From the NCBI GenBank assembly GCA_025558095.1, contig JAIVFI010000043.1, positions 1 through 64,000 on the forward strand: a stretch of DNA of 64,000 nt, written 5' to 3'. The notes under the pieces are model-generated. The model was not told the DNA's origin and ran no database searches. It saw only the letters and a list, made by a program, of their open reading frames with translations. Positions 9,826-63,968 of this stretch are shown here, in pieces. This DNA comes from Hyaloraphidium curvatum SAG 235-1. Its lineage: Eukaryota > Fungi > Monoblepharomycota. Every line of letters starts with the position of its first letter. Within the stretch, counting starts at the first letter, position 1. Both the position numbers and the translations under genes were made by a program.

Positions 9826-9923
9826 GGCCGACGCAGCGCTGTTGACGGGTGCGAAAGCCCGACCGGTGACGCACCGTCTCCCAAGACCTTCGGAGCCCCA
9901 CCCGCACAGCAGAAACCGGAAAG

Positions 9924-10267
9924 ATGACCTCCTCGGGCGCGCCTCCCCGCACGGACGACCGCGATTCCGCGGCCCCCGGCTCCACCGCCTCCGGGCAGCC
10001 CAAGGACCAGGGCGGCGTCGTCGGAGGTCCGCCCGGCGCTTCTTTCCCAAAGCCCTGATAGAATGCCTGCTCAACTCGCCGTCCCCACCAGCGCTCAAAT
10101 CCGCCGTCGGCCTGGGCGCCTCGCAGCCCGCGCAGGAGCACGGCTCGTCCAACGCCACGCCGCAGGCGCAGGCGGCATTCACCCCCGGCGAGACGCCCAA
10201 GCCGGCGTCGGCCGAGGCCGCGGGGAGGGGGCAGAACCCGTGGACGACGGAGGAGCCGAGGCACTGA
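9924..10267 (+). CDS. Small (92 aa) hydrophilic, disordered, hydrophilin-like protein; 1 intron
   Basis: ATG at 9924, intron 10027-10091 (gtccgc...ccag), spliced frame MTSSGAPP...QGGVVG|ALKSAVGLG...EEPRH*. Confidence 0.6.
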
Positions 10268-32213: not shown

Positions 32214-34223
32214 ATGTCGTCCAAGGTTCGCGCCGCGTCCTCCGGACTGTGTGGGGAGGGCAGGGCGGCGGCGGTGTGGCCCGTCGCCCCCGGGAGGCAG
32301 CCCGCCCGCCGCGGCCGCGGCCCGCATCGCGCACCGGGGCGCCGAAGACGGGCGGGTCGTGCTATTCGCCGCCCGATGCGCCCGATCCCGGGGCATTCCG
32401 GCCGCCGGGACCCGCCGCCCCCCGCCCGCCCCTTCGGCCCCCCGCTGACGCCCGCCCCCGACAGCGCAAGGCCGCGGCGACCGCCGAGTCGGAAAAAACC
32501 AAGACCTCGCGCACCTCCTCGCGCAAGGTCGACAAAATGGAGGTCGACGGCGCCGAGGTGACCACGACCACCGAGGTCACCAAGATCGTCACGACCTCGG
32601 CCGAGGCGCTGGTCGGCGACGCGCAGGAGGAGATCAACAGCCTGCGGCTGCAGCTCCAGGCCAAGGACACGGAGATTGCGGACCTGAACAAGCAGATCGC
32701 GGACGGTGGGTGCCTTGCTGCGGGCGCTCCCCGCTCCGGCCAGCTAATGGCAACGCGCAGGCTTCGCCAAGGCGGCCAAGCACTCGGAGATCACCGCCGG
32801 GCTCAACGCCAAGATTGCCGAGCTCGAGCTCCGCGTCAAGGAGTCGTACGAGCGCTACGTGACCATCGAAAAGACCGTCACCATCCTCCGCGTCGAGAAG
32901 GCCGAGGCCGAGAAGAAGATCGCCGAGGTGTCCAAGGAGCTCAAGCACGCCTCGGCGGCCAGCACGGCCGAGCTGGACAAGCTCAAGGGGGAGAACCACC
33001 GCCTGAAGGACCAGGTGAAGGAGTACAAGGAGCTGGCGGCCAAGCTCGAGAAGGAGGGCGGCGAGGCGTGGGCCGCGCTCAAGCAGGTCGAGGACAACGC
33101 GGCCGCGGCGCTGCACCAGGTGCGTACCCTGCAGGCCGGTGGGGTATCCGGGGGAAGGGGCTGACGGGGTCCCCGTGCAGGCTGCGGCCGCCGAGAGGGC
33201 GATCGCCGAGAAGCTCAAGGAGGCCCAGGCCGACGACGAGTACATGTGGGTCTCAACCGCGCCTCTCCGCCGGCGGATAGGACGCTCACCGCTGCTCTCG
33301 CGGCAGGGACAACCTGGTCAAGGAAAAGGCCCGCGAGATCGCCGACCTCAAGAAGGCCGAGGCCGCCATGGCCAAGGCCCTCGCCGAGGCGCAGGCCGAC
33401 GACGCGGCGATGGAGAAGCTCATCTCGCAGAAGGACAAGGAGCTCAAGAAGATGGAGGCCGAGCGGCGCGCGCTGGCCAAGCAGCTCGCCGACGCCAAGG
33501 CGGACGACGCCTACATGGACGACCTGGTCAAGCAGAAGGACGCGGAGCTGCAGAAGCTCGCCAAGCAGAAGGAGGCGCTGGCCAAGAAGCTGGCCGACGC
33601 CGAGGCCGACGACGTGTACATGGACAAGCTGGTCAAGGACCAAAAGTCCAAGCTCGACGCGCTGCACGCCAAGGAGAAGGAGCTCGCGGACAAGCTCAAG
33701 GCCGCCCAGGCCGACGACAAGTACATGTGCGTCGCCCGGCTCGCCGCCTCATCCCATCCCGCCCCCGCTCACCTACCGTTGCCCGCCGTCCAGGGAGGAC
33801 CTCGTCAAGAACAAGGACGAGCAGATCGCCGAGCTCCAGAGCCAGATCAAGCAGCTCACCTCGGTCATCCGCACCACCCAGATCGAGATCAAGCAGCTCA
33901 TCGCCTCGCGCGAGGGCCTCATCGCGCGCCTCGAGGGGTCCGCGGCCTTCTACGAGAAGATCAGGAAGCTGGTCAGGATCACGGCGGACCTCGAGGAGGA
34001 GGCCAACAAGGAGTACAGCAGGGACCTGGACGTGGGTTGAACCCGGCCGCCCTTGCCCGGTGCGGATGGGCGCTGACCGGTCTCCTCCCCCGCGCGCCTG
34101 CAGTGCATGAAGGCGTTCGGCGGCGCCATCACCGTGACCATCGCCACCATCGTCGAAGAGACGACGACGACCACCGCGACATCGTCGGCGCCGTCGCCGA
34201 CCAAGGCCAAGGGCAGGAAGTAG
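32214..34223 (+). CDS. Long coiled-coil protein with five 35-aa repeats (multi-intron)
   Basis: MSSK|RKAAATAE; heptad-rich; repeats AxADDxxM(D/E)xLxxxK. Confidence 0.85.
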
Positions 34224-35703
34224 GCCGCGGTGCGGGCGCGCTGTGCGCGCTGCTCTGTACAATGCCGCTGCAAAAAGACTAGGTCGTTTGTGATTCCATC
34301 TTCGAAGGGTCCCGGGGCGTCCATCGCGCAGAGCATCGGAGGGACTGTGGCCGGGCCCTTCTTTCCGTGCCTGTGAGCACCGATCGTCCTCGTGCAGAAC
34401 CCATGGAAGGCCGACTACAAGTGAAGCCAGGCCACCTCGGGCTACATTGCATCTCATGCTATCGCTCGTCCAACGGAGGATTTTCTCTTATCGTGAGGGT
34501 CCCGCGCCCCGCTCCCCACGCCCCGCGTTGACCTGTAGCTCTTCAGACACCTCGCATACTCCCGAGTCCGGCGCGCTTTCGGGCCCGGCGGCTCCGGATC
34601 CGCCGCCCATCGTGCGTCCCCCGCCCGAGCTGCTTGCAGGCAGAGAGCCGACGGCGATCGTGTGCCGCCGGCGCCCTGCTCCGCCGTCTCGAACCTCTTG
34701 CGGGAGGTTGCCATCCCTGTCCTCGTCGAATCGGTCGTGCTCCGTTCGAACTGGCTCGCGGCCCCGGAACGGCGCTCGCCCGGTCGCACCTCGGCGTGGC
34801 GGGAAGAGCCCGGAAACACGGTCCCTGCGCGACTCTCCTGCGGCCTTTCGCCAGCGTCGCGAACCCGAGTGCGCCTCGCCCTGCGCGGCCGCACGGCCCC
34901 GGAATCCCCGGCCGACCCCCCCGCGCACCTCGCCAGTCTCCAAGTCCAATTCTTGTGGGATCGAAGAGGGCACAGGGGAATGCCTGGCAGGCACGGCTCA
35001 GGTTCTCGCTGGGCCTGCTCGGCATCCGTTCCGAATGCCGGGCCGCACAGTCATCGAGGCCGATCGCCCGCGCCTCCGCGCCCCGCAAGCCCGGAGCAGC
35101 GCGGACCGCGGCTCTGCGCGGCTCATGGCGCGCATCGGAGCAAAGCACCGCCGGCTGCTCGGGAACCCGGTCGCATGTGCGGGGCTTCCGGAGATCGCGC
35201 TCTCCGCGCCGTTCCGGCCCAAGGACGTCGTCCTCCGGGCCCGGCCGGGTCCGCTGGGCCCCGAACCACCCGTCTGGCGGGCGGCGGTGACGGCGGAGGG
35301 GCAGCTCCGTTGCCTCGGGCTGGTGGGTTTTCGACGGGCATCATCCGGCCCGGGGTTCCCCCGGACGACGGCGCTGGCGGTGTTTGTGACGGGCGTCGGC
35401 CTCCTGGGTTTCGGCAGAGCAGAGATCCCAGGCGTGCGGTGCTGCGGAGCCGCGTGCGTCGCATCAAGGTGGAGATGTGTGACTTGCTGTCGAACGGAAA
35501 GGGAGGCGCGCACGGTCATGCGAATATCAGGTCCAATTGGTGAAAGTGGCAAGAAGTACACCAGAGCGCGGCTGCCGGCGCCGCGTCGAAGAAGAGCACC
35601 GTCCGCGGCGCGGAAGGGTAAGTCCAAGCCGTCCCAGTCTCAGGAGGCCCGTCACAATGTCAAGTGCGCCCAGAGCAAACCCAACGCATCCGTCGATCCG
35701 GCG

Positions 35704-55821: not shown

Positions 55822-56652
55822 ATGGCCTCCACCGACGACCCCGTCCTCCGCATCATGGTCATCGGGGCCCACCCGGACGACTGCGAGTACTTCAGCGCCG
55901 GAACCGCGTCCATCTACACCTCGCTCGGGCACCGCGTGCGCTTCGTCTCGCTGACCAACGGCGACGCCGGGCACCCCTCGCTCTCCGGAAAACCGCTCGC
56001 GGAGCGCAGGAAGGCCGAGGCCGAGGCCTCCGCACGGGTGCTGGGCGTGGAACGCGTCACCGTTCTCGACAACCACGACGGGGAGCTGGTGGACACGTTG
56101 GACCTCCGCCGCACCGTGATCGCGCTGATCCGGGAGTTTGCTCCGGACGCGGTGTTCACGCACCGTCCGTGGGACTACCACCCGGACCACCGCGCCACGG
56201 GGAGGGTGGTGGGCGACGCGATGCAGCAGCTCGCGATCAGGGCCATCGTGCCGGACGTGCCGCCGCTGGCTCGGCAGCCGGTGCTGATCTACATGTTCGA
56301 CATGTTCCGGAAGCCTTATCCGTTTCAGCCGGAGGTGGTGGTGGACGTCACGCCGGCGCTCCAGAAGAAGGTGGACGCGCTGGAGAAGCACACGTCGCAG
56401 GTGTTCGAGTTCCTGTACGGGGAGCCGGACGTGCCGCCCGCGGGGAGGCGGGCGTGGTTGGAGCGCAAGCTGCAGCCGGAGCTGATGGCTCCTTTGCGGG
56501 CGCACCCCGAGGCGGTGAGCAAGGCGTTCGGGGACAGGGCGGGGGAGGTCAAGTGCGTCGAGGTGTTCGAGGCGGGCGAGTACGGCGCGCGGCTGACGGA
56601 GCAGAGGAGGAGGAGGCTGTTTCCCTTCCTGTACGGCGGCTCCAAGCTCTGA
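55822..56652 (+). CDS. PIG-L/LmbE family N-acetyl deacetylase, intronless, with C-terminal SKL
   Basis: AHPDD; LTNGDAGH; RRKAEA; THRPWDYHPDH; KKVDALEKHTSQ; GGSKL*. Confidence 0.92.
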   Translation: MASTDDPVLRIMVIGAHPDDCEYFSAGTASIYTSLGHRVRFVSLTNGDAGHPSLSGKPLAERRKAEAEASARVLGVERVTVLDNHDGELVDTLDLRRTVIALIREFAPDAVFTHRPWDYHPDHRATGRVVGDAMQQLAIRAIVPDVPPLARQPVLIYMFDMFRKPYPFQPEVVVDVTPALQKKVDALEKHTSQVFEFLYGEPDVPPAGRRAWLERKLQPELMAPLRAHPEAVSKAFGDRAGEVKCVEVFEAGEYGARLTEQRRRRLFPFLYGGSKL

Positions 56653-56727: not shown

Positions 56728-57861
56728 TCAGAGCTCGTCCTTTTTCGCTTCCGCCGGGATGTCCTCGACCTCCTTGGTCGGCTGGCCGATCTTGACCTCG
56801 ACGCCGTCGCCGTACTGCTCCCGCAGCATCTGCCGGATCCTCTCCTCCACGCCCTGGAGCTCCGGCGGGGTTTCTTCCTCGGCATCTGCTGGGGCGGGAG
56901 CAGGAGCGGGTGCGGGAGCGGGGGCCGGGGCGGGGGCAGGCGAGGCGGCCGGCGCCTCCTCTTCCTTCTTCGCCTCCGCCGGCACCTCCCCCTCCTTCGC
57001 CCCCTCCTCCTTCGCCTCCTCCTTCCCCCCCTCATCGTGCAGCCTCGCCGCCCTTTCCAGCGCCTCCTTGGCCTTCTGCATCGCGATCTCCCGCGCCGGC
57101 TCCTTGGCCGCGGCCGCGTACGCGTGGTTCTGCGCGTCCTCCTCGCCGATGCCCAGCAGCTCCACGTCAAAGGTGAGCTCGGCGTCGGGGGGGACGACGT
57201 CGGGGATGCCGCGGGATCCGTAGCCGAAGCTGCGCGACGGCAGGCGGGATCAGCTTCCTAGCAGGCGGGAACGGTCGGGAGGCAACCCACAGCGGCATCA
57301 CCCTGACCGCCGCCCTCTCGCCCACTTTCATGGTCCGCAGCGCCTGGTCGATCCCCGGCACCAGCTTGGGCGGCTCGGCGCCCACGACGAGGGAGGCGGG
57401 CGCGCGCTGGCGCGAGTTGTCGAAGATGGCGCCGGTCGAGTCGATGGTGGCGACGTAGTGGAAGGTGACGAGGTCGCCGGGCTTGGGGATCGCGCCGTGG
57501 CCTATCCGCGTCGGATATAAATCGAAATCAGGGAGATTCGTTTCCAGCTGGTTGCGTGCCACCGACCCTCGCGCGTGGTCTCCTTTGCCCAGTACTTGCC
57601 CTCGCCCCACGGCCACTCGCCCTCTCTCAGCTTCTTCTCCCCGCCCATCTCCGCCTGCGCCTGCCTGCTTGCGGCGGCGGGGAATTCGGGCACCGTCCTG
57701 ACGACCGGCTTCTTGAACACCGCGAGCAGGAACAGCAGCGCGACGAGCCCCGCGACGCCCGCGATGGCCGCGTTGGCGCGCCACGCCTTGGACGCCTTGG
57801 CGGGCTTGCGCAGCGCGGATGGCGGCGGCTTGGGCTTGCCGGACGGTGGGGAGGGCGCCAT
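56728..57861 (-). CDS. ER FKBP-type peptidyl-prolyl isomerase with a signal anchor and C-terminal KDEL; 2 introns
   Basis: TM helix; PKPGDLVTFHY; FDNS; VPGIDQALRTMKVGE; GYGSRGIPDVVPPDAELTFDVELL; KKDEL*. Confidence 0.9.
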
Positions 57862-57992: not shown

Positions 57993-59234
57993 TCATCCAC
58001 CTGCCCGGGCATCCATCACCATGTCCTGCTCGGCTTCTCCCGCCCCCCTGCCCCGTTCTGCCCACACCTCCCCCGCCGCCCTCCCAACCTCGTCCGCCCA
58101 CCGCTCGACCCCCCAACCCTCCCCCTCGATCACCCTGTCCACCGTATCCCTGCGCGCTGCCGACGCCCGCGCATACAGCGCGTCGTAGTGGTCCAGCAGC
58201 ACCCCCGCGGCCTCCTCCCTCCTGCCCTCCCCGAGCATCCGCAGCACGTCCGCCGTGCGATCCCCGCCCAGCCGCCTCGCGATCCGCCGCACCGCGTCCG
58301 AGAGGGCAGCGGGGTCGGCACCGCCGTACTCGTCGACCGCCCTCCTCAGCCGCTCCTCCCGGGGCACCTCGAGCACGATCCGCGGGGCGCACAGGAGCGA
58401 CGCGTAGATCCCCGCCGGCAGCGTCGCCCTCCCTATGCTCCTGTTCTCGTGCTCCGCCAAAATGGGCCCCGGCCTCGGATCGGCGAGCAGAGCGTCGACC
58501 TCCCCCGACAGGCGGTTCTCAAAATCCTCCGTGGTCGCGAATTCGCCCTGCGGCGCGGGGTGGAGCACCCCTCCCCCCGCGGCTTCGAGCGCCGCCCGCT
58601 GTCGGTCCGTGAACTTTGGAACGGGGTGCAGCGGGACGTGCGGCACGGGGAACAGGCCCCCGAACGCGCTGCCCCTGTGCCCTGCCAGCCCCTCGAGGTC
58701 CAGCACCTTGCTCTCCCTGGCAGCGAGGCACCGCAACACCTCGGACTTGCCCGATCCCGTCTTGCCCGCGATAACGACCAGCGGCACCCCGTCCGCCAAG
58801 CGTTCCAGAACGTGCCGCCTGTAGGCCGCGTAGCCGCCGGCCAGCACGGCGCACGGCACGCCCAGCAGCTGGAAAAGAAAGGCAACGGCCATCGACCGCA
58901 TCCCGCCGCGGGCGCAATGCACGCGCACCCGTTCGCCGGGCTTCAGTCCCCGCCCGACGGCGGCAGCGGCGGTCCCCAAAGCCGACATCCGCGGCCCGAC
59001 CCTCTCCAAAGCGAGCAGCACCGCCCTTTCTCTCCCGGCGCTCTTGTAAAGTGTCCCCACTTCCGCGCGGTCCGCGTCCGGGAACAGCGGCAGCGAGGCG
59101 GCGCCCGGGATCCGCGCGCGCGCGTGTTCGCTGGGGCTGCGGGCGTCCAGGAGGGGCCCCGGATGGGCGAGGAAGAGGGACGGCGGGAGGGGCAGCGGGC
59201 TGGGAGGGCCGGGTGGGAGCTTGGACGGGTGCAT
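57993..59234 (-). CDS. selU: tRNA 2-selenouridine(34) synthase-like protein (rhodanese + P-loop); intronless
   Basis: LDARSPSE...IPGAASLPL...RAEVGTLYK; CARGGMRS; GGYAAYR; GKTGSGKS; LDLEGLAGHRGSAFG; FEN; IGRATLP; HYDALY. All are MnmH/SelU/YbbB hallmarks. Confidence 0.9.
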   Translation of the reverse strand: MHPSKLPPGPPSPLPLPPSLFLAHPGPLLDARSPSEHARARIPGAASLPLFPDADRAEVGTLYKSAGRERAVLLALERVGPRMSALGTAAAAVGRGLKPGERVRVHCARGGMRSMAVAFLFQLLGVPCAVLAGGYAAYRRHVLERLADGVPLVVIAGKTGSGKSEVLRCLAARESKVLDLEGLAGHRGSAFGGLFPVPHVPLHPVPKFTDRQRAALEAAGGGVLHPAPQGEFATTEDFENRLSGEVDALLADPRPGPILAEHENRSIGRATLPAGIYASLLCAPRIVLEVPREERLRRAVDEYGGADPAALSDAVRRIARRLGGDRTADVLRMLGEGRREEAAGVLLDHYDALYARASAARRDTVDRVIEGEGWGVERWADEVGRAAGEVWAERGRGAGEAEQDMVMDARAGG

Positions 59235-62710: not shown

Positions 62711-63968
62711 GATGGCCGCGGCAGACGCGTCCGGAAGCTCATCATTGGCGCCCGAACCGCCCACGGACGCCCTGCTCGCCGCCTTCCGCGCCGCGTTCCC
62801 GCGCCACTCCTCCGCCCCGCTCGCCTTCTCCGCGCCGGGCGGCGTCGAGCTGTGCGGCGCCCACACGTACGAGCAGAAGGGCCGCGCAGTTGCCGTGGCG
62901 GTGGACCCGCCGACGAGCCTGGTTTGCGCGCCCAGCGGGTCGCCGGTGTTCACGCTGGCGTCGCTGGGAGGGGAACGCGTCTCGGTGGACCTCGCCTCGC
63001 TGGAGCCCGTGGAGGCGGAGAAGGGCACCGTGGAGGCGCTCATTCGCGGCGTTGCCAGCGGACTGTCGCAAAAAGGTTACCGAACCGCTGGCCTGGACGC
63101 CGCCGTCGGCTCGGCAGAGCCCGTCGCCCCGGGCTTCCCTTCCTCTGCCTCCCTCGGCGTCGTCCTCTGCTGCGCCTTCCTGGGGGCGCTGAACGACCCA
63201 CCGCCAAATTCTATCCCGCCCATGACGCCCACGGACATCGCCATGGTCGCGCACCGCGCCGAAATGCTCTTTTTTGGCCGCCCGTGGGGCCCGGCGACCC
63301 ACCTTGCGTCGGCCCACGGCTCCGTTGTAGCCGTCGACTACTCCTTCTCTCCACCCAGGGCGGAAAAGGTCCCCATGGACCTCCCCTCCGCCGGCCTCTC
63401 CCTCCTCCTCGCCTCCCCCTCCCCTCCCTTCCACCCCTCGCCGGCGCTCCTCGCCGCCCTGCACCACGACATGTCCTCCATCGCGCGGTGGTGCTCCCTC
63501 GGCGAAGCAACGGCGCTGGGCGACTGCAACGGCGACGAGTTCCTCGACATGGTCCCGCAGCTGCGCCGGCACGGCGTGCCGGACGGGGCGGTGCTGAGGG
63601 CGCTGCACTTTTTCGAGGAATCCGCGCGCGCGGACGACATCGCCGCCGTGTTGCGGTCCCCCGCGCCCGGCTTTTCGGCCGTGCTGGATGCCGTGCTCGC
63701 GTCGGGGCGGTCGGCGGCCATGTACCTCCAGGCGCTGCACGAGGCGCCGGAGCACCAGCCTGCGGAGCTCGCGCTCGCAATCACGGAGCAGTTCCTGGCC
63801 TCTCGGGGGGCGAAGGGGGCCTGGAGGGCGGGGGAGGGGAGCACGGTGCTGGCAATCGTGCCCGGGGAGCTTGCCGGGGAGCTGCAGGAGGTGCTCGAGG
63901 AGGCATTCGGCCCGGGGTGCGCCGTCCGCGCTTCGGTTCGGGCTACCGGGGCAGGGAAGACGTCGTAG
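62711..63968 (+). CDS. Degenerate galactokinase (GHMP kinase)-like protein; intronless
   Basis: FSAPGGVELCGAHTYEQKG; PGFPSSASL; AEMLFFGRPWG; RALHFFEESAR; ASGRSAAMYLQ. Confidence 0.8.

What the first reader, a model, noticed from the sequence alone, without database searches (positions are those of the whole stretch)
57993..59234. Bacterial-type tRNA 2-selenouridine synthase (SelU/MnmH) in an intron-rich fungal genome
Seen: a complete intronless ORF with the rhodanese Cys (CARGGMRS), Walker A (GKTGSGKS) and DLEGLAxHRGSxFG, flanked by spliced eukaryotic genes and with host-like GC, which argues against contamination. It has an insertion of about 35 aa (PVPHVPLHPVPKF...HPAPQGEF) after GSAFG. Known: SelU converts 2-thiouridine to geranyl-thio- and then 2-selenouridine at the tRNA wobble position using selenophosphate, and is regarded as a prokaryotic trait. 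Selenocysteine machinery is absent from most fungi but has been reported in a few early-diverging ones. Inference: this fungus may make seleno- or geranyl-modified tRNA, a selenium pathway not established for fungi. No obvious mitochondrial presequence.
Basis: partly seen in the sequence, partly recalled or inferred. Interest (0 to 1): 0.82.

Follow-up and report, generated by a model that had tools for sequence, protein, structure and literature searches.

The report
Bacterial selenium-tRNA enzyme in a fungus
An early-branching aquatic fungus carries, as a long-settled nuclear gene, the enzyme that bacteria use to swap sulfur for selenium in tRNA; reviews call this trait prokaryotic, so the gene is a concrete, testable candidate for making selenium-containing tRNA in a eukaryote.

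Summary
Confirmed: 57993-59234 (-) is an intact, single-copy, intronless 413-aa SelU/MnmH gene. It passes both curated cut-offs and keeps the catalytic Cys (C97 = C107) and Walker Lys (K155 = K163). It is not contamination. GC3 matches the host, and three orthologs (49-54% identical, from eukaryotic contigs of 54-56% GC) share its insert; two of them also lie beside the same FKBP gene. The genome also encodes Sec-type selenophosphate synthetase, tRNA-Sec, SepSecS, eEFSec, Elp3, Ctu2, mitochondrial MnmA, and tRNA-Lys(UUU) and tRNA-Glu(UUC). No ortholog has a presequence, so cytosolic tRNA is the likeliest substrate; that would give mcm5Se2U, a nucleoside missing from the modification list I read. 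It also sits on green-algal-type and other protist contigs, and those proteins probably form one clade with the fungal ones (98/90; 93/76 without the query). No other fungal ortholog was found, and no paper in the library describes eukaryotic SelU.

The parts
57993..59234 (-). SelU/MnmH gene, 413 aa, intronless, single copy in the genome
58815..59153 (-). Rhodanese domain (aa 28-140) with the SelU-specific helical insertion
   Evidence: PF00581 33 bits vs cut-off 22.2; superposes on 3g5j at rmsd 1.3-1.4
58914..58916 (-). Cys107 = Salmonella Cys97, required for selenation
   Evidence: pairwise alignment; Jager 2016, PMC4830565
59010..59012 (-). Ala75 = Salmonella Gly67, where larger residues raise geranylation; Ala is a natural minor variant (13 of 187 homologs)
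58743..58766 (-). Walker A motif, aa 157-164; Lys163 = Salmonella Lys155, required for geranylation
58659..58700 (-). Family motif DLE..A.H.GS.FG (aa 179-192)
   Evidence: invariant columns
58542..58658 (-). Loop after GSAFG carrying the insert of about 33 extra residues; a helix is predicted at aa 210-218; shared with the three orthologs, and shorter inserts occur at the same place in the other eukaryotic proteins
56728..57861 (-). Neighbouring spliced FKBP gene ending in KDEL (introns 57502-57566 and 57230-57290); not part of the system, but the synteny marker shared with L001 and L002

Best explanation
A functional, domesticated SelU that works like the bacterial enzyme, most likely in the cytosol. 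Inferred steps: Elongator and Ctu1/Ctu2 make mcm5s2U34 in nuclear tRNA-Lys, -Glu and -Gln. SelU binds the anticodon arm and S-geranylates the 2-thio group with geranyl pyrophosphate (P-loop, Lys163). It then replaces the geranylthio group with selenium from selenophosphate (rhodanese Cys107), supplied by the host's own Sec-type SPS2. The product would be mcm5Se2U34, with mcm5ges2U34 as intermediate or low-selenium form. Shown here: the gene, its family, its key residues, its long residence under purifying selection, and the presence of donor, thiolation and substrate genes. Inferred: expression, activity, compartment and product.
For: Passes the equivalog cut-offs, as do the three orthologs. 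A63, L66, C97, R129 and K155 of Salmonella are kept, and 45 family-conserved positions are kept. Orthologs are 50-57% identical with open frames and third-position differences (0.59-0.69) far above second-position ones (0.25-0.34). Sec-type SPS2 with in-frame TGA and no presequence; tRNA-Sec, SepSecS, eEFSec. Ctu2 and Elp3. Nuclear tRNA-Lys(UUU) and tRNA-Glu(UUC); the Lys loop reads CU-UUU-AA, the loop that E. coli SelU geranylated best, at 91% (PMC9105526). Bacterial SelU does not need a particular C5 group. All four fungal-clade proteins start 17-18 residues before the core with at most one basic residue, whereas the host's mitochondrial MnmA and four algal-type SelU proteins have Arg-rich leaders.
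Against: No expression or biochemical data. This protein alone in its clade has lost the family Lys136 (92% conserved) and Gln232 (93%) and has Ala at the Gly67 site, and its branch is the longest of the four (0.64 vs about 0.4). Bacterial SelU has not been tested on mcm5s2U in the papers I read. Lack of a presequence does not exclude mitochondrial import. tRNA-Gln(UUG) and Ctu1 were not looked for specifically. No close ortholog from Gonapodya or another named Sec-using fungus came up, so the gene does not simply track the Sec trait.
Confidence: 0.55

Rival explanations
1. Same chemistry, but in mitochondria: SelU is imported by an internal signal and converts cmnm5s2U34 made by the mitochondrial MnmA and MnmE/G homologs into cmnm5Se2U34.
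For: Mitochondrial MnmA is present. cmnm5s2U is a native SelU substrate. Related algal-type proteins carry organelle-type leaders.
Against: No leader in any of the four fungal-clade proteins, and stop codons lie upstream in frame. The only SPS found has no leader either. The mitochondrial genome is not in the assembly, so its tRNAs could not be examined.
Confidence: 0.18
2. The enzyme acts mainly as a tRNA geranyltransferase, leaving ges2U as the end product or regulatory mark.
For: Ala replaces Gly67, a site where every larger residue recovered in Salmonella raised geranylation. The Walker motif is intact.
Against: Ala was not among the ten residues in that table. The three orthologs keep Gly, and 12 other homologs have Ala. 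Cys107, needed only for selenation, is kept, and the genome makes selenophosphate.
Confidence: 0.1
3. The gene is real but decaying or repurposed in this lineage (for example tRNA binding, or sulfur/selenium transfer to another acceptor).
For: Lineage-specific loss of Lys136, Gln232 and Pro233, and a long branch; a clade-specific insert of unknown role.
Against: Open frame, family cut-offs passed, all residues tested in Salmonella kept except Gly67, confident two-domain model (pLDDT 87.9, pTM 0.86).
Confidence: 0.14
4. Bacterial contamination or a chimeric assembly.
For: The gene is intronless and of a bacterial family; reads could not be checked.
Against: Host-like GC3; 132 bp from a spliced gene; the same FKBP neighbour in two independent samples with different GC, with identical intron phases in L002; best bacterial matches only about 46% identical or less.
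Confidence: 0.02

Closest known systems
Bacterial tRNA 2-selenouridine(34) synthase SelU/MnmH/YbbB (TIGR03167, NF008750; E. coli and Salmonella enzymes characterised)
   Same: Rhodanese plus P-loop in one chain; Cys97, Lys155, Ala63, Leu66 and Arg129 equivalents kept; selenophosphate synthetase in the same genome.
   Different: Nuclear gene of a eukaryote; insert of about 33 aa after GSAFG; Ala at Gly67; Lys136 and Gln232 lost; presumed substrate has an mcm5 side chain instead of mnm5 or cmnm5; 29% identical to the Salmonella enzyme.
Archaeal split SelU (TIGR04568 and TIGR04569, Methanococcales)
   Same: The same two domains and the same reaction.
   Different: Two genes in archaea; this protein scores far below both cut-offs (69 vs 200, 21 vs 180), so it is not of archaeal type.
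Selenocysteine trait of early-diverging fungi (bioRxiv 10.1101/314781; PMC9457484)
   Same: The host has SPS2, tRNA-Sec, SepSecS and eEFSec, as described for Gonapodya prolifera and others.
   Different: The preprint does not contain the words ybbB or selenouridine. SelU would be a second use of selenophosphate in such a fungus.
Unnamed SelU proteins on other eukaryotic contigs (P0006, P0046, P0083, P0101, P0108, P0130, P0189-P0191; further groups P0051/P0114/P0151/P0153 and P0163/P0180)
   Same: Those scanned pass the MnmH cut-offs; the first group has an insert at the same place (all but P0046) and is the nearest kin in the trees.
   Different: About 40% identical. The green-algal-type members carry Arg-rich leaders. 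The other two groups fall elsewhere in the tree, perhaps separate acquisitions.

Membership tests
SelU/MnmH (TIGR03167, NF008750) | Score above the curated equivalog cut-off | tested here: met
   251.4 vs 219.75 and 259.1 vs 241 bits
SelU/MnmH (TIGR03167, NF008750) | N-terminal rhodanese domain with the SelU-specific insertion of about 36 aa and catalytic Cys97 | tested here: met
   Cys107
SelU/MnmH (TIGR03167, NF008750) | C-terminal P-loop domain with intact Walker A Lys155 | tested here: met
   Lys163; fold matches are P-loop kinases
SelU/MnmH (TIGR03167, NF008750) | Gly at position 67 | tested here: not met
   Ala75; Ala in 13 of 187 homologs, so Gly is not strictly invariant in the family; the three orthologs have Gly
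SeU trait (SelD + SelU) | Selenophosphate synthetase with Sec or Cys in the same genome | tested here: met
   G000:C2 near 991 kb, in-frame TGA in the KG-U-GCK motif
SeU trait (SelD + SelU) | 2-thiouridine-34 precursor pathway and U34/U35 tRNAs | tested here: met
   Genes only: Ctu2, Elp3, MnmA, tRNA-Lys(UUU), tRNA-Glu(UUC); Ctu1 and tRNA-Gln(UUG) not checked
SelU/MnmH (TIGR03167, NF008750) | Geranylation of s2U34 and selenophosphate-dependent S-to-Se exchange | not testable with these tools
   needs an enzyme assay or LC-MS
SelU/MnmH (TIGR03167, NF008750) | Gene is expressed | not tested
Archaeal split SelU (TIGR04568/TIGR04569) | Two separate genes, each above its cut-off | tested here: not met
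   single chain; 69.4 vs 200 and 20.6 vs 180 bits

The most novel reading that the evidence does not exclude
An unrecognised eukaryotic SelU lineage, shared by monoblepharid-type fungi, some green algae and other protists, puts selenium into tRNA. In this fungus it does so in the cytosol and makes mcm5Se2U34 (through mcm5ges2U34), nucleosides absent from the 143-entry list in PMC7694415. That would be a eukaryotic selenouridine pathway with an identified enzyme and a second selenophosphate-using trait in fungi.
Probability: 0.4. Interest if true: 0.88.

Novelty: new variant of a known kind. Interest (0 to 1): 0.72.

Why it matters
Selenouridine is treated as a prokaryotic selenium trait (PMC9312934; PMC4561486). 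Selenium-containing tRNA was reported decades ago in plant, algal and mammalian cells, but the position of the selenium was not described (PMC7216251), and whether eukaryotes use the bacterial route is called unknown (PMC7694415). Here is an intact nuclear SelU, with donor, precursor and substrate genes, in a fungus. One LC-MS run on its tRNA plus an E. coli complementation would test the question directly, and could reveal a new nucleoside. Selenouridine favours reading of G-ending codons, and the five host genes counted use them heavily (AAG 40: AAA 3, GAG 102: GAA 21, CAG 38: CAA 2). The relatives at 54-56% GC keep the gene too, so codon bias is not the reason it was kept.

Tried and rejected
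The insert as a retained intron: rejected, because it is conserved as protein in three orthologs. An upstream exon or longer N-terminus: no sign; all four orthologs start at an equivalent Met with in-frame stops upstream. Donor lineage: not found. The bacterial backbone of every tree is unresolved; the Cyanobium/Synechococcus group is near in some trees but at bootstrap 47; the GTDB scan gave one distant hit of 34%, and the best 80 metagenome hits were all 32-42%. Mitochondrial tRNAs: cox1 is not in the assembly. The organisms behind L001, L002 and L013 could not be named; their kinship rests on shared neighbours and on 53% identity of a PRP4-like neighbour to the host's copy. The journal version of the 2019 fungal Sec survey is not held; I searched the preprint instead. 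PMC7216251 says YbbB orthologues were identified in mammals, citing a bovine-liver study I could not read; none of my hits was recognisably animal. The large HMMER search was used once because the novelty claim rests on absence of relatives.

Full report
Observation. It passes the curated cut-offs of two MnmH equivalog models (TIGR03167 251.4 vs 219.75; NF008750 259.1 vs 241) and fails the archaeal split models. It is the only copy in the 31.9-Mb assembly. A structure model is confident (pLDDT 87.9, pTM 0.86). Its N-terminal domain superposes on the only solved SelU fragment found, 3g5j, and the rest matches P-loop kinases.

Residues. Aligned to Salmonella MnmH, A63, L66, C97, R129 and K155 map to A71, L74, C107, R139 and K163. 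In Salmonella C97 is required for selenation and K155 for geranylation (PMC4830565). G67 maps to Ala75. Larger residues at that site raise geranylation, but Ala was not among the ten mutants listed; it occurs in 13 of 187 homologs, and the three closest orthologs keep Gly. This protein has also lost Lys136 and Gln232/Pro233; its orthologs keep the Lys and the Gln. These are mild warnings, not evidence of loss of function.

The gene belongs to the host. GC3 is 0.87 against 0.88-0.94 in neighbouring genes. The stop codon lies 132 bp before the start of a spliced FKBP gene with two GT-AG introns. Three orthologs, 49-54% identical, were found. They come from other samples, on contigs of 54-56% GC, and their GC3 (0.52-0.59) follows their own contigs. 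In L002 the same FKBP gene lies next to SelU, with the same intron phases and the same 211-nt middle exon. In L001 the FKBP tail lies just downstream, and two further genes match window 32.5-34.2 kb and about 10 kb. The third contig carries a Bromo_TP gene and a PRP4-like WD40 gene, the latter 53% identical to the host's copy. Among the four genes, third codon positions differ at 59-69% and second positions at 25-34%, with open frames throughout. So the gene has been inherited vertically and under purifying selection in this lineage for a long time. The host is a fungus by its full-length alpha-aminoadipate reductase (two halves, 746 and 683 bits). The name Hyaloraphidium curvatum comes from earlier notes of this scan; I did not confirm it directly.

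Partners in the genome. Selenium donor: SPS2 with an in-frame TGA at the Sec position. Sec machinery: tRNA-Sec with UCA anticodon, SepSecS, eEFSec. Precursor pathways: Ctu2 and Elp3 for cytosolic mcm5s2U, and MnmA for the mitochondrion. Substrates: intron-containing tRNA-Lys(UUU) and tRNA-Glu(UUC). After splicing, the Lys loop is CU-UUU-AA, the loop on which E. coli SelU reached 91% geranylation; that enzyme needs U35 but seems independent of the C5 group (PMC9105526).

Compartment. All four fungal-clade proteins have 17-18 residues before the core with at most one basic residue, and SPS2 has no leader. In contrast the host's MnmA begins with an Arg-rich presequence, and four algal-type SelU proteins have leaders of 42-50 residues with 5-6 Arg. 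I therefore favour the cytosol. This is an inference from sequence make-up; no targeting predictor was available. H. curvatum mitochondria encode only seven tRNAs and must import others (PMC2488353), so cytosolically modified tRNAs could also serve there.

Mechanism. By analogy with the bacterial enzyme: geranylation of s2U34 from geranyl pyrophosphate, then replacement of the geranylthio group by selenium from selenophosphate. With the Elongator side chain the product would be mcm5Se2U, which is not in the list of 143 modifications in PMC7694415. I put about 0.8 on SelU-type activity on tRNA and about 0.55 on cytosolic selenation.

Distribution and origin. The whole-library HMMER search gave one 50% cluster for the fungal group (360 bits) and then a drop to 238 bits. 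Two word searches, one with a profile of the eukaryotic group, added no further fungal member and none named from Gonapodya or any other fungus. Spliced, split or unannotated genes could be missed, and only the best 150 HMMER hits were listed. Several longer hits lie on eukaryotic contigs: beside a spliced eIF5A that looks green-algal to me (L014), a spliced EF-hand gene (L017), a COMM-domain gene and a dynein heavy chain (L016); one is from the euglenid Urceolus cornutus in EukProt. In a mixture-model tree the four fungal proteins (100/100) join nine of these proteins at 98/90. Without the Ala-rich query the support is 93/76, and in one quick tree the group was unresolved. Independent of the tree columns, 12 of the 13 have a lengthened loop after GSxFG (20-46 residues vs a median of 12; only 1 of 202 others exceeds 18), and 6 of 13 share a PCxxLxGGY motif seen in 2 of 275 others. 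One shared origin is likely but not shown. Two other eukaryote-like groups fall elsewhere. No bacterial donor can be named. Only some of these proteins have a checked eukaryotic context.

What is known. Reviews place selenouridine in prokaryotes and describe geranylated uridine as absent from eukaryotes that lack mnmH. Old reports of selenium in eukaryotic tRNA did not locate the atom, and the route is called unknown. The fungal selenocysteine survey does not mention ybbB or selenouridine. Ten literature searches returned no paper on a eukaryotic SelU. The library lacks most subscription journals, and family databases may already list eukaryotic members without comment.

Verdict. A real member of the SelU/MnmH family in an unexpected domain, with everything it needs present in the genome. 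It is a new variant of a known kind. The chemistry is borrowed from bacteria and unproven here, which caps the score; the question it opens is old and can be tested directly. Interest 0.72.

Noticed in passing
L016:8001-9947 (P0114): SelU fused to a C-terminal 4HBT thioesterase domain (PF13279, 71 bits) on a contig with a dynein heavy chain; a eukaryotic SelU of a separate group.
   Followed up: partly
P0095 and P0039 (no locus fetched): Fusions that tie SelU to selenium supply: P0095 is SelU followed by AIRS and AIRS_C domains (SelD-like); P0039 has an N-terminal putative Se/S carrier domain, PF11823.
   Followed up: partly
L014:729-2171 (P0130); also P0189-P0191: Green-algal-type SelU proteins with Arg-rich N-terminal leaders, probably organelle-targeted; candidates for the selenium-containing tRNA once reported in algae.
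   Followed up: partly
window 32300-34300 (+): Spliced gene for a coiled-coil protein with repeated acidic/Met units, about 70% identical to a gene near SelU in L001; only a weak Pfam hit, below cut-off.
   Followed up: no
window 9870-10260 (+): Small spliced gene conserved in L001 just upstream of its SelU; not identified.
   Followed up: no
window 55822-56652 (+): Intronless PIG-L family deacetylase ending in SKL, below the BshB1 cut-off (115.7 vs 182.5).
   Followed up: no
window 62711-63968 (+): Divergent galactokinase-like protein, far below all GalK cut-offs.
   Followed up: no
G000:C31:77548-78204 and 90101-90757: Two nearby copies of an intronless AIRS-fold gene that weakly match SelD (about 42 bits, below cut-off); not SPS2, identity not checked.
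   Followed up: no
L115 (G000:C43:220984-221076): Called tRNA-Pyl(CUA) by ARAGORN; the sequence looks like an intron-containing tRNA-Arg(UCU) read out of register, so probably not a suppressor.
   Followed up: partly
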